This document shows positions 1 through 64,000 of a stretch of DNA of 64,000 bases, piece by piece (positions within the stretch are counted from its first letter, which is position 1; every line of letters begins with the position of its first letter). The DNA lies in IMG/VR virus record IMGVR_UViG_3300032287_004484, positions 124,001 through 188,000 of that record; one strand, written 5' to 3'. Under the pieces are notes generated by a model. The model saw nothing but the letters and a program-made list of their open reading frames with translations, ran no database searches and had not been told where the DNA came from. Both the position numbers and the translations under genes were made by a program.

Positions 1-2
1 GT

Positions 3-254
3 GATTTCTTTTTTTTCATTCATAATGAAACAATCAAAAATACTATTAAGATATTTATCGTGATTTTTAACATGATTAAAGTTTTCAAAATCTGATATAA
101 GCGCAATATTATATTGATCTTTAAATTTTGTTAACCAATAAGTATAAGTTATATATGAATGTTTTGATGCGTTCCTTAAATTAAAGGGTGCGCCAAAACC
201 AACTACAATAGTTTTTTTATTTTGATTAAAAGAATTCTTTTTCTCAAATCTCAT
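3..254 (-). CDS. Partial ORF running off the window edge, possibly a glycosyltransferase N-terminus
   Basis: Not in the ORF track. ATG at 254 overlaps the upstream TGA (ATGA) and reads MRFEKKNSFNQNKKTIVVGFGAPFNLRN... open to the edge. Product call rests only on context. Confidence 0.6.
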   Translation of the reverse strand, partial: MRFEKKNSFNQNKKTIVVGFGAPFNLRNASKHSYITYTYWLTKFKDQYNIALISDFENFNHVKNHDKYLNSIFDCFIMNEKKEI

Positions 255-1246
255 TCTTTATTTTCCTTATTAAATTGTTTTTCAATCCATTTAAAAGTTT
301 TTTTCATTCCATCTTCTAATTTAGTTGAAGGTTCCCAATTTAATAATTCTTTAATTAAAGTATTATCACTATTACGACTCTTAACACCTTGTGGAGCACT
401 AACATTATAAATATAAGTTGAATCTATAATATCAGTTTTAGAAATTTTCATTGCTAAATCATGCAAATATTGAATAGTAACTCCTTGACTAGAACCTAAA
501 TTAACTGGACCTTGAATTTTATTATTTATTAATTTATGTATTCCAACAATTGCATCTTCTATGTACATAAAAGATCTTCGTTGTTTACCATCTCCCCAAA
601 TTTCAACATGATCTTTTTTCATATTAATATATTCAATAATTTTTCTAATTGAAGCAGCTGGAGCTTTTTCTTTTCCATCTTTCCAAGATCCATGAGGTCC
701 ATAAACATTATGAAAACGAGCAATCGTAACTGGAACTCCAAATTCTTTATTAAGATAACGATAAAGTTCTTCACAATATAATTTATTTAATCCATACATT
801 AAATCAGGATGTGCTGGCCACGCATCACTTTCTTTTAACATAATATCTTTAGAATCATCAGTTTGAAGAGAATCGTTATAGACACAAGCAGATGAAGAGA
901 AAAAAACATGTGGCTTATTCTCACTTTTTAAAATACTTTCTATTAAATTAATATGAATCTTTCCTGATAATCCAGTTAAAAGATGATTATGTTCGCAATA
1001 TCCGATTCCACCCATATCCTCAGCTAGGTTATAAATAATATTAACACCTTGAGTAACTGAGTCAGTAATTTGAGGATTGACCATATCTCCTTTTTTACCA
1101 TGATAATTATCAGCTTCTTTAAATCTTTGATACCATTCATTTTTTGGTTTTTTATCATAAGCTTTAACTTCGTAACCTAAATCTAGACAGCTTTTAACAA
1201 GATGTCCACCTATAAATCCACCTGCTCCGCAAACAGAAACTTTCAT
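251..1246 (-). CDS. NAD-dependent epimerase, GDP-mannose 3,5-epimerase-like
   Basis: GAGGFIG, DMGGIG, SSSACVY, YGLNK, RFHNVYGP, GKEKAPAA motifs; AAGGAG RBS. Confidence 0.85.
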   Translation of the reverse strand: MKVSVCGAGGFIGGHLVKSCLDLGYEVKAYDKKPKNEWYQRFKEADNYHGKKGDMVNPQITDSVTQGVNIIYNLAEDMGGIGYCEHNHLLTGLSGKIHINLIESILKSENKPHVFFSSSACVYNDSLQTDDSKDIMLKESDAWPAHPDLMYGLNKLYCEELYRYLNKEFGVPVTIARFHNVYGPHGSWKDGKEKAPAASIRKIIEYINMKKDHVEIWGDGKQRRSFMYIEDAIVGIHKLINNKIQGPVNLGSSQGVTIQYLHDLAMKISKTDIIDSTYIYNVSAPQGVKSRNSDNTLIKELLNWEPSTKLEDGMKKTFKWIEKQFNKENKE

Positions 1247-24293: not shown

Positions 24294-24722
24294 TTAAAGT
24301 ATTTTTTGATATTTTATTTTTCCTTTTTGAAATATAAGATCGGTATAATTAGAATTATAATCTTCTATATAATTAACTTCTTTTATACCACTATGAACAA
24401 TTAGCGCTGCACACTGAGCGCATGGTTTAGTTGTGCAGTACATTACTCCACCTTTAATAGATATTCCTAAATAAGCAGCTGTTGCGATTGCTCCTTGTTC
24501 AGCGTGCTGACAAAGAGCTTTTTCAAGATTAGTTCCACTGATATTATTAGAATTACATCTTGTACAATCATCTGTAGAACATTTTTTAGGAGGACTATTC
24601 CATCCTTCTGCAACGATTCTATCTTCAATCGTAATGATTGCGCCAACTTTACGGGACAAACATTCGCTTTGTTCAGCAATTCGTAAAACTATGTCTTTAA
24701 AGAATCTATTTTTATCTTTCAT
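24294..24722 (-). CDS. dCMP deaminase
   Basis: SECLSRKVGA, HAEQ, PCAQC. Confidence 0.9.
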   Translation of the reverse strand: MKDKNRFFKDIVLRIAEQSECLSRKVGAIITIEDRIVAEGWNSPPKKCSTDDCTRCNSNNISGTNLEKALCQHAEQGAIATAAYLGISIKGGVMYCTTKPCAQCAALIVHSGIKEVNYIEDYNSNYTDLIFQKGKIKYQKIL

Positions 24723-24793: not shown

Positions 24794-25126
24794 TTAATTA
24801 AAATTCTTAGCCATGAAATCTATAAATTTGTTTCTTGGTGTTGCTCCAATAATTTTATCTACTACAACACCATTGTCAAGGACTATAAAAGTAGGTATAG
24901 AATTTACTGAAAAACCTCTTAAAATTGAAACTAAATCACCATTATCAGCATCTAATTTAAGAATTTTAATTTCTTTATTACCTTTAATCATCATGTCATC
25001 TATATCATAAATTATTGGAGACATCATTTTACATGGAGAACACCATTCTGCCCAAATATCTAATAAAACTTTATTATTAGATATTTGTTCTAAATATTCT
25101 TCGTTATTTTGTATGCTTAATATCAA
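24794..25126 (-). CDS. trxA: Thioredoxin
   Basis: WAEWCSPCK, SIPTF. Confidence 0.9.
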   Translation of the reverse strand: MILSIQNNEEYLEQISNNKVLLDIWAEWCSPCKMMSPIIYDIDDMMIKGNKEIKILKLDADNGDLVSILRGFSVNSIPTFIVLDNGVVVDKIIGATPRNKFIDFMAKNFN

Positions 25127-26979
25127 AGAGCAACCTCACAAACCCCGCCTCCGCAGGCTACTATTTCACCTCTGTTAGTAAAATCTTCGATTTCTCTTAC
25201 CTTAGTAAGATCAATTACTTTAACTAATTTTTCCATTTGGTCATATTTTTCAACAGATATTTCTTCAAAAGGTGCTTGCTGATAAGTTCCGCCGTCATAT
25301 GGTAATAGAGATACTCCAGTGTACTGATCTCTAGTATTCCACATTTCTTCTCTTAAAGAATCCCATTCATTTTCTCTAACAGAAATAGTTACTGAACAAT
25401 TATGAGTATTTGCTCCGCTTCGATGTCCTTCTTTAATCCAACTAACATTATACATATTAGCACGTTTTAACATATCTAGAGCAGTAGTTTTTTCTCTTGT
25501 GACAGATCCTTTTGGAGATTCTTGAGGAATAGAAACTACAACTCCATTTTCACTAAAAATATCTTGTTCTACTAATTCTGGAATTACTGTTCCTAAATAT
25601 TTTGCTAGAGGATCATTACCATTCATTCTTATTCTTCTAATATACCATTGTGAATGGCGATCATGTACTCCAGAAGAACTTCCAACAATAGTTGAAACGG
25701 TTCCTTCTGGTTTAACTGCTGATACTCTTGCTGCTACATTAATACCAATTTTTTTAGCCATTTCTTCATTAGTTTGAAGTGCTAATTTTGCTCCTTGTCT
25801 TAGAAGTTCAGGAGTAACGAATCCCATATTATCAGCAACACCAGTAAATGAAACACCTAATAGAGCTTCTTTTTCTGTTTGTATTTGCCAATTTTCAGAC
25901 AGGTAAGGAAATGTAGTATAAGAAGCCTGAATAGTTCCTATAATTGTTGCGGCTTTAATTCTTTTAAAGAATTCTTTTTCATTAGTAATTCCAGTTTGGT
26001 TAATACTTGTTAAATTACAAAACTGTTGTGAGTTAAGACCGATTTCAGCACAGGGATTTGTACCTAATTCATAATCGTTAGTCCAAAAAACACCTGGTTC
26101 ACCAGCATTAGAATCACGACACATATTATAAATATAATCAAATTCTTCTTTTGTTGTTTCTTGTCTATGTAAAACAACAGAATTATTTGCTCTAGCACGA
26201 TAAGGAGCTTTTTCCCACCATGTTCCACTTTTACATTTTAACATTTCTTCGTTATTTTTATCAAACAAAGATATTAAAGCTGCTCGACGAATTCCACCAG
26301 CAAGAACACAATCAGCAATCATACAAATAATATCGTGAACTTCTATTGCTTTTAATTTTCTTCCAATAGCATTAACAAACATTTTATCTACTTCTGTCAA
26401 CATGTGTCTTAGAGGTTCTGGTCCTGGAGCTTTAGCGCCTGTAGTAACTAGATATGATCCTTTAGGTCTAATTCCACTAAAATCATATTCTGGTTTAATT
26501 CCAGCATTAAAATAAGAATCTACTAACATGTTTAAAGATTGTCCCCAACCTTCTATACTATCGTGGACTCTAAAATAGCCTTCTTCTTTTGGTTTTCTGA
26601 TTGCTGGTAATTGATTAACGTGTCTATTTTGAACTGAAAATCCAACTCCTGTTCCACTTAATAATAAAAATAAAATTTCACTAAAAACTCTTTGATAAGT
26701 AATATTAACGAACGAACAATTATAAGACCTAGAATTATTAGAAATCACTGCTTCTCCACTAAATTGCATAGACCTCATAGACGGCATAATTTTTAAATCG
26801 TGCACTAAAGAAAATGCTTTGGTTATTTCAGAACTTAATTTAGGAAAACGATCTAAATGCATGTTCATTGTTCTATTTGTTGTTTCTGAAAGTGTTTCTC
26901 TTCTTTGGAGATGTGATATATATTTAGCATATGTTCTAAAACTGACAACATCGCTAAGTAACTTGTTTGATTCGTTCAT
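25123..26979 (-). CDS. nrdJ: Class II (adenosylcobalamin-dependent) ribonucleotide reductase
   Basis: YNCS, GTGVGFSV, RRAALISL, GEPG, TNPCAEI, FCNL, VKPEGT, YQQAPFE, C-terminal ACGGGVCE. Confidence 0.92.
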   Translation of the reverse strand: MNESNKLLSDVVSFRTYAKYISHLQRRETLSETTNRTMNMHLDRFPKLSSEITKAFSLVHDLKIMPSMRSMQFSGEAVISNNSRSYNCSFVNITYQRVFSEILFLLLSGTGVGFSVQNRHVNQLPAIRKPKEEGYFRVHDSIEGWGQSLNMLVDSYFNAGIKPEYDFSGIRPKGSYLVTTGAKAPGPEPLRHMLTEVDKMFVNAIGRKLKAIEVHDIICMIADCVLAGGIRRAALISLFDKNNEEMLKCKSGTWWEKAPYRARANNSVVLHRQETTKEEFDYIYNMCRDSNAGEPGVFWTNDYELGTNPCAEIGLNSQQFCNLTSINQTGITNEKEFFKRIKAATIIGTIQASYTTFPYLSENWQIQTEKEALLGVSFTGVADNMGFVTPELLRQGAKLALQTNEEMAKKIGINVAARVSAVKPEGTVSTIVGSSSGVHDRHSQWYIRRIRMNGNDPLAKYLGTVIPELVEQDIFSENGVVVSIPQESPKGSVTREKTTALDMLKRANMYNVSWIKEGHRSGANTHNCSVTISVRENEWDSLREEMWNTRDQYTGVSLLPYDGGTYQQAPFEEISVEKYDQMEKLVKVIDLTKVREIEDFTNRGEIVACGGGVCEVAL

Positions 26980-27047: not shown

Positions 27048-27545
27048 TTAATTATATATCATAAAATTATTTATGATTATTCCTTCTCCACGTTGAAGAT
27101 AGAATCCATAGTTAAAGAAATAATTTTTTTCTTTTTTTTCTACTTCATCTGGATTAAAAGTTTCAATTATGTCTACGTCTCCAACTAACCAATCGTGTTC
27201 AAATTTATCATATGATGCTATAGAATCATCTAAACTTATATCTTCAATTTTAACTGGTGATAAAATACCATCAGAATCTAATCTTAGAAATGAACCTTCG
27301 CTTTCAAGGAACTGAATAATTATTTGATTATCGTCACTTGTTTTAATTATATAAGCTTTATTTTCTATTTTATTAAGAACTTGTTTTGGTATTAATTTTA
27401 ATTCTACATCTTTATAAAAGAAATTAATTGATGATCCCCATTTAAAATGTAATGCTTTTAAACTTTCTTCTCTTTTACGCTTTATTATCTCTTCTTTATT
27501 TTCATTAATAAAGAACATTGTTTTCGATAAACATCTTACAATCAT
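27048..27545 (-). CDS. Free-standing degenerate HINT/intein-like domain protein
   Basis: CL at residues 5-6, YIIKTSDDNQIII, VKIEDISLDDSI, C-terminal IIINNFMIYN-stop. Confidence 0.55.
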   Translation of the reverse strand: MIVRCLSKTMFFINENKEEIIKRKREESLKALHFKWGSSINFFYKDVELKLIPKQVLNKIENKAYIIKTSDDNQIIIQFLESEGSFLRLDSDGILSPVKIEDISLDDSIASYDKFEHDWLVGDVDIIETFNPDEVEKKEKNYFFNYGFYLQRGEGIIINNFMIYN

Positions 27546-27904
27546 TTATAACTCCAAAAATCTTTTTTTAGTGTGCTAATTAGAAAATTGCTTAATTCAT
27601 TATCTGCCATTGTTAATCGTCTAATAGTTGTCATCTCATCTTGATTAGCAACATCTTTTTGAAAATCAGTAGGAAGAAGATTATAAAACTCATAAAATGA
27701 TATTGAATTAAAAAAATAATATTTAGAATAATTATTCCCCATGAAATAATAAATACATTCTGGAATAATAGTGTTTTCTTTTTTATAAGAAAAGAATTTT
27801 TTTAAAGTCGGTGGATTGACATTTCTTTCATTACAAAACTTGATTATGTAATTAATACTATACTTTGTTTCTTGTTTGATTTTACTAAGAGAAAAATTAT
27901 CCAT
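27542..27904 (-). CDS. Hypothetical protein
   Basis: 120 aa ORF coupled (ATGA) to the HINT-like gene. Confidence 0.65.
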   Translation of the reverse strand: MDNFSLSKIKQETKYSINYIIKFCNERNVNPPTLKKFFSYKKENTIIPECIYYFMGNNYSKYYFFNSISFYEFYNLLPTDFQKDVANQDEMTTIRRLTMADNELSNFLISTLKKDFWSYK

Positions 27905-27949: not shown

Positions 27950-28369
27950 TTATTCCATATCGTATAAAATTAAAAAAATTCCAAACATTGTTAAAATTAT
28001 GCCAATGATATTATTAAAAGAAAATTTAATTTCATTATTAAAAAACATAATTAAAAAAATGATAATTGGATATCCTAATTCAAGAATTGAAATAACAAAA
28101 GGATTAACTTCTTTCATGGACATAAAAACTAAAAAATTTCCTAAAATATTAAATAATATAAATGATAACATTAAAATATAATTTCCATTACTAATTATTT
28201 TAATATCGTTATATAAATCTTTATTAAAATAACCAAAAGCAATGATTAAAAAATTTATAGGAAATAAGATCATACAAAAACCAGCATATGATAATCCTAA
28301 CCTAGTAATTTTACTAGACAGATAATAGGAAAATCCCCACGCAATAGCTATAAAGTAAGCAAAAATCAT
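27950..28369 (-). CDS. EamA/DMT-family membrane transporter (single repeat)
   Basis: About five hydrophobic segments, AIAWG, ELGYP, NEIKFSFNNIIGIIL. Confidence 0.75.
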   Translation of the reverse strand: MIFAYFIAIAWGFSYYLSSKITRLGLSYAGFCMILFPINFLIIAFGYFNKDLYNDIKIISNGNYILMLSFILFNILGNFLVFMSMKEVNPFVISILELGYPIIIFLIMFFNNEIKFSFNNIIGIILTMFGIFLILYDME

Positions 28370-28554: not shown

Positions 28555-29967
28555 ATGGCTTGGAAATATAAATATGATTCACTTTCTCAATTTGTAGCTG
28601 ATTACCAATCAGCTGTTGGAATATGGACAGAATATGGAAGGATAGATTCTGTTCAAGTAACGCCTTTTACTAATCCTGCAAATGATGGATATGTAATTAT
28701 ATATGCTATACAGCCTGGATCAAAAATAAGAAATCTTAATAGATTTTCTTTTTCACTTACTCAATTTTTAAATCTTAGTTTTTCTAAGGAAATACCAGGG
28801 CTTAATTTATATTTGGGAGAAGATCCTACTGTTAGAACAGTTAATACTTGGGATCTTTTAACTACTGTTCAAAAACAATATTATCAAGATACAGCCATAA
28901 GATTAATTGCTGATAATTATTTAAGAGTTTATTGGCCACCAGAACCATTAGAAACTCTTAATCCTATTGCTCAAATTAGAATTGATAACACTATCGTTTC
29001 TCCTGCATCAACATATTCATTCCAAAGTTTCTTAAACGAGGAAAAGATTTTAAGAATTTATGTTAGAAATATTGGATTAAGTACATTACAAATATTACAA
29101 AATCCTTCATTATCTAGTAGCGTTTATTATCAGATTACCCGTCAATTAACTAAAACAACTCTCATTAAAGACGATCAAGATTATATAGATATATCACTTT
29201 ATTCTAATGTTCTTGGATTAAAAAATGTTGTTTTGACTTTTAGAACTAATGATCCTGCAAGACCAATTTTTTCTTTTGAATTAAGTTCCATTGTAGAGCT
29301 TAATATTTCAAGTCTTGCACCTCAAATTTCTCTTACTACTGCTGAAGATATTAGTAAAGTAGAAAATGGAGATCAAATTAGTCTTGTTGATTTTATAATT
29401 AGTACAGTTAAAACTTATAATGATATTGATTATATTGTTCTTAAAGATGCTGCTAATAATGAAATTATAAGATTTAATAGTCCTGCAGCTTCAGGCGGAA
29501 CTAATTATTATGAATGGGTTCCAAATACTCCTATTACTGCCGACACAACGATATCTGCCTTTGTCAGCGACATTAATAATAATCAAAATGTTTCAAATGT
29601 GGAAATAGATTTTATGAATCGTACTTATTGGGGATATCATCCTAATGCTACACTAACTAGCAATCAAATTAATTTCTTAGATAGTCGTTTACAACACTAC
29701 GTATCTGGAACTTATGAGTTTGGCGTTAATAATTATGCCACATCGGGTGTACCAGTATATCTTTATATTGCTTTCCCAACTAATTTAGGAGAAATACAAT
29801 ATGTAGATGATTTAGATAATGGTTTTACTTATGTTCCAACATCATTTAATATCAGTCAAATTAATTTTACTAATCAGCACAACTATACTACTTCCTATAA
29901 AGTATATCGTACGGTTAATAAAACATTTGGTAATGATTTATCTTGGCGCGTGACTATACTAGGGTAA
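28555..29967 (+). CDS. Virion structural protein with Ig-like (choice-of-anchor D/ASH-like) domain
   Basis: IYVRNIGLSTLQI...TNDPARP; first gene of the fibre operon. Confidence 0.6.
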   Translation: MAWKYKYDSLSQFVADYQSAVGIWTEYGRIDSVQVTPFTNPANDGYVIIYAIQPGSKIRNLNRFSFSLTQFLNLSFSKEIPGLNLYLGEDPTVRTVNTWDLLTTVQKQYYQDTAIRLIADNYLRVYWPPEPLETLNPIAQIRIDNTIVSPASTYSFQSFLNEEKILRIYVRNIGLSTLQILQNPSLSSSVYYQITRQLTKTTLIKDDQDYIDISLYSNVLGLKNVVLTFRTNDPARPIFSFELSSIVELNISSLAPQISLTTAEDISKVENGDQISLVDFIISTVKTYNDIDYIVLKDAANNEIIRFNSPAASGGTNYYEWVPNTPITADTTISAFVSDINNNQNVSNVEIDFMNRTYWGYHPNATLTSNQINFLDSRLQHYVSGTYEFGVNNYATSGVPVYLYIAFPTNLGEIQYVDDLDNGFTYVPTSFNISQINFTNQHNYTTSYKVYRTVNKTFGNDLSWRVTILG

Positions 29968-63260: not shown

Positions 63261-63909
63261 AAATATCATATTTATCTATTACAGATAAACTCTTATCTTC
63301 AATATTATATTTACGCATAATCTTATTAATACTGTCTTCATTTTTATTAGAATAAATCTTTTCTTTAGAATCTATCAATAATTTACCAATCAATTTTAGA
63401 TTATTTTGATTTGATAAAAAATCAAATAATTTTTGATGATTAATTTTTTGATGCTCCATAAGATTTATTTCACTTAAAATAGAATTTAAAATTTTAATAA
63501 AATTATCTTTATTTTTTGTTAATAAATTATAAAAAGATTTACTTACGTTTTTAATGTTTTTACTTGTAATTAAATCTTGAATTAAATTTTTATTATTTTT
63601 ATTAATAACTAATTGTAATAATTCTTTTAATCTTTCTTTAAATATACTAATAAAGAAATTTTCTGGTTCTTTTTCTTGTAAATAATTAATTATATTTATC
63701 AAATTAAAAGTAAAAAATAAAAATTTAAAAAGATCAGCTTTTTCATTATCATTTAAATCAGGTAAAAAATCTTTTGAAAGAGAATCAAATGGAAATTCTT
63801 GACTTATATATTTAAAAACGTTTAAATCAACATTAGAGTCTCTTAATAATTTATCATTTTTAAGATAATTTAATATGTAATTAATATTAATCGTCTTATC
63901 TTCAGTCAA
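63259..63909 (-). CDS. Hypothetical protein
   Basis: 216 aa ORF; start uncertain. Confidence 0.6.
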   Translation of the reverse strand: MTEDKTININYILNYLKNDKLLRDSNVDLNVFKYISQEFPFDSLSKDFLPDLNDNEKADLFKFLFFTFNLINIINYLQEKEPENFFISIFKERLKELLQLVINKNNKNLIQDLITSKNIKNVSKSFYNLLTKNKDNFIKILNSILSEINLMEHQKINHQKLFDFLSNQNNLKLIGKLLIDSKEKIYSNKNEDSINKIMRKYNIEDKSLSVIDKYDI

Positions 63910-64000
63910 TTCTTTTATCTTTTTAATAAGAGATTTTTTTTCTTTATCTTTTAAACTTTCAATTTTCTTTATTAATTTTAAACGATATATTTTATTATTA

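What the first reader, a model, noticed from the sequence alone, without database searches (positions are those of the whole stretch)
27048..27545. Free-standing degenerate intein/HINT gene immediately upstream of nrdJ
Seen: 165 aa protein beginning MIVR-CLSKT (block A-like Cys), with YIIKTSDDNQIII (pre-block B), VKIEDISLDDSI (the V.A.DL..GD.I strand) and ending IIINNFMIYN-stop (block G-like terminal Asn). Both conserved His residues appear lost (SEGSF for TxxH; YN for HN). There is only a 4-residue N-extein, no C-extein and no endonuclease. NrdJ itself appears uninterrupted. Established: RNRs are frequent intein hosts. Inference: a domesticated HINT fold acting in trans (adaptor, RNR regulator, decoy for split inteins) or a Cys acyl carrier.
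Basis: partly seen in the sequence, partly recalled or inferred. Interest (0 to 1): 0.7.

Follow-up and report, generated by a model that had tools for sequence, protein, structure and literature searches.

The report
Catalytically dead stand-alone intein-fold gene
A giant freshwater phage carries a small, well-conserved gene whose protein has the fold of a self-splicing intein but has lost every splicing residue and stands alone; it is always paired with a second small gene and almost always sits just in front of the phage's ribonucleotide reductase gene.

Summary
The 165-aa ORF at 27048-27545 (minus strand) is real. It lies 68 bp upstream of an uninterrupted nrdJ in a 290-kb phage genome with terminal repeats. 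With a 37-sequence alignment AlphaFold2 gives a confident model (pLDDT 88). All top structural matches are inteins, Hedgehog or BIL domains (Z up to 14.5) across the whole length.

The "block A Cys" and "terminal Asn" are peculiar to the window's close clade. Among 26 non-redundant relatives, Cys5 occurs once and the terminal Asn twice. Superpositions put a nearly invariant Arg4, not Cys5, at the nucleophile position. Block B and G histidines are absent, so splicing or cleavage is very unlikely.

The gene is under strong purifying selection (dN/dS about 0.08, like nrdJ). In 11 of 13 distinct contexts the next gene is an RNR, although the RNR type varies.

My best reading is a domesticated, non-catalytic HINT-fold binding protein. 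It probably works with its 120-aa partner at the head of the phage dNTP-synthesis operon. The function itself is inferred, not shown. It is a new variant of a known kind, of moderate interest.

The parts
27048..27545 (-). Free-standing, catalytically degenerate HINT-fold protein, 165 aa and acidic (family median pI 4.9). Family-conserved residues are R4, K24/R25, F34, K50-x-I52-P53-K54, Q78, Y146, G155 and N159.
   Evidence: ORF. Homologues. AF2 pLDDT 88.4. Foldseek and VIA hits are all HINT domains, Z up to 14.5 over residues 1-165. dN/dS 0.08. Conservation table.
27542..27904 (-). Partner gene 'p120': a 120-aa basic protein (family median pI 8.9) with no known family. Its stop overlaps the HINT start (ATGA). 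A homologue sits directly upstream of the HINT gene in every locus examined.
   Evidence: Alignments A4 and A5. hmmsearch of loci. No Pfam or PHROG hit. dN/dS 0.06-0.2.
27546..27555 (-). Translation start context of the HINT gene. GGAG (27555-27552) lies inside the 3' end of p120, followed by an in-frame TAA (27548-27546) immediately before the ATG. No N-terminal extein is possible.
   Evidence: Read directly from the sequence.
25123..26979 (-). Uninterrupted monomeric-type class II ribonucleotide reductase (NrdJ, 618 aa), 68 bp downstream of the HINT gene.
   Evidence: Pfam RNR-II_ins_dom and Ribonuc_red_lgC; PHROG 367 at E 5e-134. Orthologues of 80-94% identity lie downstream of HINT homologues.
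24794..25126 (-). Thioredoxin, overlapping the end of nrdJ, in the same leftward operon.
   Evidence: Pfam Thioredoxin, E 2e-19.
24294..24722 (-). dCMP deaminase, the last gene of the nucleotide-metabolism block.
   Evidence: Pfam dCMP_cyt_deam_1, E 2.5e-19.
27950..28369 (-). Small EamA-like membrane protein (139 aa). It is the first gene of the leftward block, divergent from the tail-fibre genes that start at 28555. It is not conserved next to the cassette in relatives.
   Evidence: Pfam EamA 29.0 bits against a cut-off of 28.2. Upstream neighbours differ in other loci.

Best explanation
The gene encodes a stand-alone HINT-fold (Hedgehog/intein) protein that descends from an intein-like ancestor. 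Its boundaries still coincide with the two former splice junctions: three leader residues, then position 1, and an end at or one residue before the terminal-Asn position. It has lost the position-1 nucleophile (now a nearly invariant Arg), the block B Thr/His, the block F Asp/His, the penultimate His and, in most members, the terminal Asn. It therefore cannot splice or self-cleave and acts as a non-catalytic protein. It is kept by purifying selection and is inherited as a two-gene cassette with a basic ~120-aa protein encoded immediately upstream, often with translational coupling.

Inferred mechanism: the acidic HINT protein serves as a binding or adaptor module, probably together with p120. 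The residues conserved in the four former active-site blocks (R4, Q78, Y146, N159) now form either a structural clasp for the free termini or a ligand/partner site. The pair is expressed at the head of the operon that makes dNTPs (RNR, thioredoxin, dCMP deaminase). It most likely acts on that module at a level common to all RNR classes, such as expression, assembly or coupling to DNA metabolism, rather than on one enzyme surface.

Shown: the gene, its fold, the loss of catalytic residues, selection, the partner gene and the synteny.
Inferred: non-catalytic binding, partnership with p120 and a link to dNTP synthesis.
For: Fold:
- AF2 with 37 sequences gives pLDDT 88.4 and pTM 0.84.
- The top 50 Foldseek PDB hits are all inteins, Hedgehog or BIL domains, best E 4e-6.
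- VIA-align against 48,161 chains gives 32 top hits that are all HINT domains, Z 14.5-14.3 for the TvoVMA and NpuDnaB inteins and Hedgehog 1at0, covering residues 1-165.
- BFVD, ESM Atlas and AFDB give the same answer.

Sequence echoes of homology:
- Collinear sub-threshold PF14890 hits occur in P0016, P0011, P0022 and the L023 member, E 0.0025-0.05.
- The only PDB profile hits are inteins.

Loss of catalytic residues:
- Superposition ranges are 4..165 to 1..last residue in 8 chains. Also 1jva 2..165 to 282..737, 1at0 4..165 to 258..400, and 1am2 3..165 to 0..198.
- Column statistics: R4 25/26, C5 1/26, terminal Asn 2/26, His at the block B column 5/26.

Selection:
- dN/dS is 0.08 in the closest pairs, against 0.06-0.08 for nrdJ.
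- Homologues are 152-195 aa and free-standing down to 22% identity.

Partner:
- A p120 homologue lies upstream in every locus.
- The two families have opposite net charge.

RNR linkage:
- An RNR is the very next gene in 11 of 13 distinct contexts, although its type changes. The types are the 618-aa NrdJ, the same with an intein, a 642-aa NrdJ only 26% identical, a fractured nrdJ with split inteins, and an 811-aa lgN/lgC/TSCPD RNR.
- In one further context NrdG/NrdD lies 2.4 kb away.
Against: - No experiment or structure shows any binding. The one complex prediction (p120 + HINT) gave no verdict.
- L027 has the cassette but no RNR within 6 kb.
- Five phage contigs with a 57-63% identical NrdJ lack the cassette, so RNR does not need it.
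- In deeper lineages the cassette also neighbours a divergent SbcCD-like pair. The adjacency may therefore be inherited gene order rather than functional coupling.
- Residue-level placement of R4, Q78, Y146 and N159 around the old active site rests on alignment ranges and motif matching, not on measured distances.
Confidence: 0.5

Rival explanations
1. The cassette's job has nothing to do with RNR. p120 and the HINT protein are a conserved early-gene pair of a T4-like jumbo-phage lineage, for example acting in host takeover, anti-defence or recombination. They sit beside RNR only because gene order in this region is inherited.
For: - RNR types are swapped next to an identical HINT protein (L007/L008 against L009).
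- The cassette is absent from phages with a related NrdJ.
- L027 has no RNR within 6 kb.
- A divergent Metallophos/SMC (SbcCD-like) pair recurs upstream in L011, L012, L023, L027 and L029.
- The cassette evolves several times faster than nrdJ (dN 0.24 against 0.04), as accessory interaction proteins often do.
Against: - Upstream neighbours vary widely (EamA, tubulin, unknown genes).
- The downstream RNR adjacency survives RNR replacement in 11 of 13 contexts. That is hard to explain without co-expression or a functional tie.
Confidence: 0.3
2. It is still an autoprocessing element. In the window's clade, Cys5 attacks the preceding peptide bond (N-terminal cleavage or thioester formation) or Asn165 cyclises.
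For: The window's clade conserves MIVRCLSK and a terminal YN. N165 superposes on the intein terminal Asn.
Against: - Cys5 occurs in 1 of 26 and the terminal Asn in 2 of 26 non-redundant members.
- Arg4, not Cys5, superposes on residue 1.
- There is no block B Thr/His, no block F Asp/His and no penultimate His.
- There is no C-extein to release.
- Pfam intein models score far below threshold (18 bits against 35.8).
Confidence: 0.04
3. It is a decaying relic of a selfish intein, or of an intein-bearing gene whose exteins were deleted. It is transcribed but has no function.
For: All catalytic residues are lost. RNR loci in relatives are hot spots for inteins and homing endonucleases.
Against: - dN/dS is 0.08-0.3.
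- The family spans 22-98% identity with constant length and an intact fold.
- New family-specific residues are conserved (R4, KMIPK, Q78, Y146, N159).
- There is no similarity to the local RNR intein.
Confidence: 0.05
4. The cassette is part of a homing or recombination system. It marks, or helps create, the boundary at which RNR cassettes are exchanged between phages, for example through DNA binding by p120 and the HINT domain in the way intein HINT domains assist their endonucleases.
For: - An identical HINT protein (P0007) lies next to two RNRs only 26% identical. One of these comes with a GIY-YIG endonuclease and the other with an intein.
- The exchange boundary lies just 3' of the HINT gene.
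- p120 is basic and has weak HTH-like language-model neighbours.
Against: - No nuclease motif or family hit occurs in either protein.
- The HINT protein is acidic.
- The cassette co-diverges with its genomes rather than showing a sporadic distribution within the lineage.
- The adjacent GIY-YIG, HNH and intein endonucleases suffice to explain RNR mobility.
Confidence: 0.08

Closest known systems
Class 1 mini-inteins (e.g. TvoVMA, NpuDnaB and NrdJ-1 inteins)
   Same: The whole-length HINT fold matches (Z 12-14.5). The domain boundaries coincide with the splice junctions. The block G-like strand pattern (h-h-h-N-[ND]-h-h-h) is retained. Weak collinear matches to Pfam Intein_splicing occur.
   Different: It is not inserted in a host protein. 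Arg occupies position 1. There is no TxxH, no block F Asp/His and no penultimate His. The terminal Asn is present only in one clade, and no +1 nucleophile exists. It cannot splice.
Yeast HO endonuclease and the WHO elements (domesticated, free-standing degenerate inteins; bioRxiv 10.1101/2020.01.20.913210, found)
   Same: They set a precedent for an intein-derived gene that stands alone, no longer splices, and is kept for a host function.
   Different: HO keeps a LAGLIDADG endonuclease and adds a zinc finger, and its function is DNA cleavage. The phage protein is a bare HINT domain with no nuclease. There is no detectable sequence relationship.
Hedgehog/Hog and bacterial intein-like (BIL) domains
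   Same: The fold matches (1at0 Z 14.3; 2lwy Z 12.1; BIL2 Z 11.5). Protein-language-model neighbours carry PF01079.
   Different: Those are C-terminal or internal autoprocessing modules with a Cys at position 1 and a cargo domain. Here there is no cargo, no Cys at position 1 and no processing residues.
Uncharacterised stand-alone HINT-size phage proteins in BFVD (e.g. A0A1S5RCV4 143 aa, A0A8S5P792 144 aa 'Hint module', A0A218MLH4 132 aa)
   Same: They are phage-encoded proteins of about one HINT domain in length with the same fold (TM 0.54-0.61 by query).
   Different: There is no detectable sequence similarity to this family. I did not examine their catalytic status or gene context. None is known to pair with a p120-like gene or an RNR.

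Membership tests
HINT (Hedgehog/intein) structural superfamily | Horseshoe-like all-beta HINT fold over the whole domain | tested here: met
   The AF2 model has pLDDT 88.4. VIA-align gives Z 14.5, 14.3 and 14.3 with 138-144 residues aligned over 1-165, and the 32 best of 48,161 chains are all HINT domains. Foldseek against PDB, BFVD, Atlas and AFDB agrees.
Intein (protein-splicing element) | In-frame insertion between an N-extein and a C-extein of a host protein | tested here: not met
   A TAA directly precedes the ATG and a TAA follows Asn165. All 26 family clusters are 152-195 aa stand-alone ORFs.
Intein (protein-splicing element) | Nucleophile (Cys/Ser/Thr) at intein position 1 (block A) | tested here: not met
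   Arg4 superposes on residue 1 in 8 or more chains, including VMA1 Cys284 and Hedgehog Cys258. R4 occurs in 25/26 members. Cys5 occurs in 1/26 and is otherwise V/I/L/T/F. The register is uncertain by one residue, but the Cys is not conserved in either register.
Intein (protein-splicing element) | Block B Thr-x-x-His | tested here: not met
   SEGS aligns to TIDH of a split intein (hhalign, low confidence). His occurs in that column in only 5/26 members, and no His lies anywhere in 74-90 of the window protein.
Intein (protein-splicing element) | Block G penultimate His, terminal Asn and a +1 Cys/Ser/Thr | tested here: not met
   The window protein ends in Tyr-Asn-stop. The terminal Asn occurs in 2/26 members, and the penultimate column is C/I/T/L/F/Y. 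No residue follows.
Intein (protein-splicing element) | Match to Pfam Intein_splicing (PF14890) above the gathering score | tested here: not met
   The best member scores 18.1 bits against a cut-off of 35.8. The window protein has no hit.
Homing-endonuclease-bearing intein / HO-like domesticated intein | Endonuclease domain (LAGLIDADG, HNH, etc.) inserted in or attached to the HINT domain | tested here: not met
   The 165 aa are fully accounted for by the HINT fold. There is no nuclease family hit.
Hedgehog/Hog or BIL autoprocessing domain | Cys at position 1 preceded by a cargo domain that is released | tested here: not met
   Only a 3-residue leader is present, and Arg sits at position 1.
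RNR accessory protein (functional class) | Physical or regulatory interaction with a ribonucleotide reductase | not testable with these tools
   Only gene adjacency is available. An RNR is the next gene in 11 of 13 contexts. Phages with a related NrdJ lack the gene.

The most novel reading that the evidence does not exclude
The p120/HINT pair is a dedicated accessory of phage ribonucleotide-reductase modules and works irrespective of RNR class, for example as a regulator or assembly factor of the dNTP-synthesis operon. This would be the first non-autoprocessing, trans-acting function for a HINT fold in viruses of prokaryotes. The former splice-site cleft would be rebuilt (Arg/Gln/Tyr/Asn) into a binding site.
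Probability: 0.2. Interest if true: 0.75.

Novelty: new variant of a known kind. Interest (0 to 1): 0.55.

Why it matters
HINT domains are known almost only as single-turnover autoprocessing modules: inteins, Hedgehog and BIL domains, and toxin-releasing HINTs. This family has kept the fold and the exact domain boundaries for a long time while replacing every catalytic residue, and it has acquired a fixed partner gene. That shows the fold can be recruited for a non-catalytic job in phages.

It offers a natural "dead intein" scaffold for studying what the HINT fold does besides chemistry. It is also a data point for how inteins are domesticated, or conversely what their ancestors looked like.

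The locus further documents rapid in-place swapping of RNR genes next to a constant cassette. The variants are class II enzymes only 26% identical, intein-bearing and fractured genes, and class III. This is useful for understanding modular exchange in jumbo phages.

Tried and rejected
- AF2 with the shallow 13-sequence alignment gave an unusable model (pLDDT 42). Only the 37-sequence alignment worked.
- Pfam and PHROGs gave no significant hit for the HINT protein or for p120.
- tblastn and blastn against 50,697 GenBank phages found no relative.
- hhalign of the close clade against the RNR intein of relative L009 found no similarity, so the gene is not a recent copy of the local intein.
- Complex prediction for p120 + HINT returned no verdict (score 0.00). 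This is neither support nor evidence against binding.
A1 found nothing in IMG/VR. A7 found one viral locus (L027), and in metagenomes only the already known contig.
- P0023 (1655 aa, 7 matched stretches) is a eukaryotic HYR/SRCR repeat protein and a spurious hit.
- A 99-aa ORF upstream of nrdJ in L018 and L019 with a 'TPHKF' motif is NIF/HAD-like, not HINT.
- A weak PF14890 hit in the own genome (window about 63478-63927, minus strand) falls in a low-complexity Lys/Asn-rich ORF and was dismissed.
- The p120 profile hit to the DapH N-terminal domain 3bv8 (E 0.016) and its HTH-like Atlas neighbours (score 0.84 or less) are too weak to use.
- The promoter and terminator scan was uninformative in this AT-rich DNA.
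- No RNA-seq run was shown to hold the locus in a search across all run kinds; a dedicated RNA search was not run.
- Residue-level distances in the model could not be measured, because coordinates are not exposed to scripts.

Full report
**1. The observation**

The window is bases 124001-188000 of a 290,274-bp virus record with direct terminal repeats, that is, a jumbo phage. DNA runs that hold it are freshwater and lake metagenomes.

Read on the minus strand, the sequence is GGAG (27555-27552), TTA, TAA (27548-27546), then ATG (27545-27543). The frame is therefore closed by a stop codon immediately before the start, and no N-extein can exist. Asn165 is followed by TAA (27050-27048).

The upstream 120-aa ORF (27542-27904) ends in TGA overlapping the ATG (ATGA). 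A 618-aa NrdJ (25123-26979) starts 68 bp downstream. It is followed by thioredoxin and dCMP deaminase. NrdJ is uninterrupted. Relatives L009 and L018 carry an intein at its NPC motif, and L010 has the gene fractured by split inteins.

**2. It is a real, selected gene family**

A word-indexed search found 12 proteins of 59-98% identity. An exhaustive profile search of 1.84 billion representatives found 26 clusters with E below 1e-3. All are stand-alone proteins of 152-195 aa, apart from one spurious eukaryotic repeat protein.

For the closest DNA pairs dN/dS is 0.08 (window against L020; L002 against L007). This equals the nrdJ values of 0.06-0.08, although dS is near saturation.

**3. Fold**

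With only the 13 close sequences, AF2 failed (pLDDT 42). With 37 sequences it gave pLDDT 88.4 and pTM 0.84, and all five models scored 86.6-88.4.
- Foldseek against the PDB returned only inteins, Hedgehog and BIL domains among the top 50, best E 4e-6.
- VIA-align against 48,161 representative chains returned 32 HINT domains before the first unrelated chain (which scored Z 2.2). Z was 14.5 for the TvoVMA intein, 14.3 for the NpuDnaB intein and 14.3 for Hedgehog 1at0, with 138-144 residues aligned over model residues 1-165.
- BFVD, the ESM Atlas and AFDB clusters agree.

Sequence-level echoes support homology rather than mere analogy.
- Four of 31 members, plus the L023 member, give collinear sub-threshold hits to Pfam Intein_splicing. 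Protein residues about 30-120 match profile positions 12-96, with E 0.0025-0.05.
- The only PDB profile hits at E below 10 are inteins.
- Protein-language-model neighbours with a family carry PF01079 Hint.

**4. What is left of the intein machinery**

Eight chains align as model 4..165 to chain 1..last residue. These are Mtu RecA, PI-PfuI, PI-TkoII, MchDnaB-1, PhoRadA, Cne Prp8 and a TFIIB intein, plus Hedgehog 258..400. In addition:
- 1jva aligns 2..165 to 282..737. From my own knowledge, the VMA1 intein is Cys284-Asn737.
- 1am2 aligns 3..165 to 0..198.
- 8cpo aligns 3..164 to -1..182.

Arg4 thus takes the place of the position-1 nucleophile. Cys5 is block A position 2, normally a hydrophobic residue. 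Asn165 takes the place of the terminal Asn. The register could be off by one residue.

Family statistics make that uncertainty unimportant. Among 26 members non-redundant at 60% identity:

| Column | Finding |
|---|---|
| R4 | 25/26 |
| Column 5 | Cys only in the window's clade; otherwise V/I/L/T/F |
| Terminal Asn | 2/26; most proteins stop one residue earlier |
| Penultimate column | C/I/T/L/F/Y, never His |

That column holds His in 5/26 members, which looks like a vestige. No Asp or His survives in block F.

Other residues are conserved instead: R4, a K/R patch at 23-25, F34, [KR]-M-I-P-[KR] at 50-54, Q78, Y146, G155 and N159. R4, Q78, Y146 and N159 lie in the segments that correspond to blocks A, B, F and G. 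In inteins these segments meet at the active site. I infer that the old cleft is still the most constrained part, either as a structural clasp (for example Arg4 pairing with the nearby free C-terminal carboxylate) or as a binding site.

**5. The partner gene and the neighbourhood**

Every locus with sequence upstream of a family member has a homologue of the 120-aa protein directly in front. These proteins are 111-134 aa and 25-80% identical, with invariant F23, P48, N66, S67, D80 and D115.

The junction between the two genes varies. It is a 4-nt overlap in the window, L002, L004, L007 and L011. Gaps are 0 nt (L023), 1 nt (L014), 5 nt (L010), 11 nt (L012) and 70 nt (L020). All three relative frames occur, so a conserved frameshift fusion is excluded.

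The HINT family is acidic (median pI 4.9) and p120 is basic (median pI 8.9). p120 has no family or structure match worth using.

Downstream, an RNR is the very next gene in 11 of 13 distinct contexts, but the RNR differs:

| Downstream gene | Loci |
|---|---|
| 618-aa NrdJ | window, L020, L002, L011, L029 |
| 618-aa NrdJ with an intein | L009 |
| 642-aa NrdJ, only 26% identical, followed by a GIY-YIG endonuclease | L004, L007/L008 |
| nrdJ fractured by split inteins | L010 |
| lgN/lgC(/TSCPD) RNR | L014, L023 |
| NrdG/NrdD (class III), 2.4 kb downstream | L012 |
| No RNR within 6 kb | L027 |

Strikingly, L007/L008 and L009 encode the identical HINT protein (P0007) next to RNRs that are 26% identical to each other. 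The RNR was therefore exchanged recently just 3' of the cassette.

Conversely, five IMG/VR contigs with a 57-63% identical NrdJ have no cassette within 4 kb. In deeper lineages a divergently transcribed Metallophos/SMC (SbcCD-like) pair recurs upstream (L011, L012, L023, L027, L029).

The phage's own genome has no intein above the Pfam cut-off.

**6. Interpretation**

Three points are firmly shown.
- The protein is a free-standing HINT-fold protein.
- It has been stripped of splicing residues.
- It is under purifying selection and inherited together with p120, usually at the head of the RNR operon.

How it acts is inferred. I favour a non-catalytic binding or adaptor role together with p120, connected to the dNTP-synthesis module. 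The role would operate at a level that does not depend on RNR class (expression, assembly or coupling), because the RNR class changes while the cassette stays. Overall confidence in this reading is about 0.5.

The main rival, at about 0.3, is that the adjacency is only inherited gene order in a T4-like early region and the pair serves another purpose. Residual autoprocessing (0.04), a functionless relic (0.05) and a role in homing or recombination at the RNR exchange boundary (0.08) are less likely, for the reasons listed under rival explanations.

**7. Comparison with what is known, and novelty**

At fold level the protein is a member of the HINT superfamily. It fails every tested defining feature of inteins other than the fold: host insertion, position-1 nucleophile, TxxH, HN plus a +1 nucleophile, and the Pfam threshold. 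It should not be called an intein.

The nearest conceptual precedent is yeast HO and the WHO elements, which are domesticated free-standing degenerate inteins (bioRxiv 10.1101/2020.01.20.913210). However, those retain an endonuclease.

BFVD contains other uncharacterised stand-alone HINT-size phage proteins, so a lone HINT ORF is not unique. Three full-text literature searches found no description of a catalytically dead, partner-linked, RNR-adjacent HINT family. I rate it a new variant of a known kind, with interest 0.55.

Noticed in passing
L007:5693-7621 and L008:5421-7349 compared with L009:766-4044: Contigs that encode the identical HINT protein (P0007) carry completely different RNR genes downstream. 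One is a 642-aa NrdJ, 26% identical to the window's, followed by a GIY-YIG/NUMOD3 endonuclease. The other is a 94%-identical NrdJ interrupted by a 474-aa intein. This indicates a recent in-place RNR exchange whose boundary lies just 3' of the HINT gene.
   Followed up: partly
L010:2585-7179: In a distant relative nrdJ is fractured into four ORFs joined by three split inteins. A 210-aa HNH-like ORF (L010:5847-6479) lies between pieces 3 and 4. This is the 'fractured gene' arrangement of Dassa et al. 2009 (PMC2677866).
   Followed up: partly
L009:766-4044 and L018:4001-6808: The NrdJ inteins of relatives are inserted at the conserved TNP|C motif, so the Cys of that motif is the +1 residue. The window's NrdJ has this site intact (…GTNPCAEIGL…).
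   Followed up: partly
window 27950-28369 (-): A 139-aa EamA-like (DMT superfamily) membrane protein heads the leftward nucleotide-metabolism block (Pfam 29.0 bits, cut-off 28.2). A small transporter-like gene is unusual in a phage, and it is not conserved at this position in relatives.
   Followed up: no
L023:3824-4975 and L024:925-2076: A tubulin/FtsZ-family gene (383 aa; PF00091, E 3e-9) lies immediately upstream of the p120/HINT cassette in one lineage. At least some carriers are therefore tubulin-encoding jumbo phages.
   Followed up: no
window 24794-25126 (-) compared with L020:7421-7753 and L002:9878-10213: The thioredoxin next to nrdJ is only 51-53% identical between genomes whose NrdJ is 92-94% identical, and its dN/dS is about 0.45-0.55. 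It is either evolving very fast or has been replaced.
   Followed up: no
L011:2569-5477, L012:1706-2758, L023:1551-2576, L027:2209-5390, L029:1262-2299: A divergently transcribed Metallophos (SbcD/gp47-like) gene, often with an SMC-like (SbcC/gp46-like) gene, recurs upstream of the cassette in the deeper lineages. This is a second conserved neighbour besides the RNR.
   Followed up: partly
window 63478-63927 (-): There is a weak PF14890 match (E 0.0036, 14.7 bits) in a Lys/Asn/Ile-rich 266-aa ORF. I judged it a low-complexity artefact, not an intein.
   Followed up: yes
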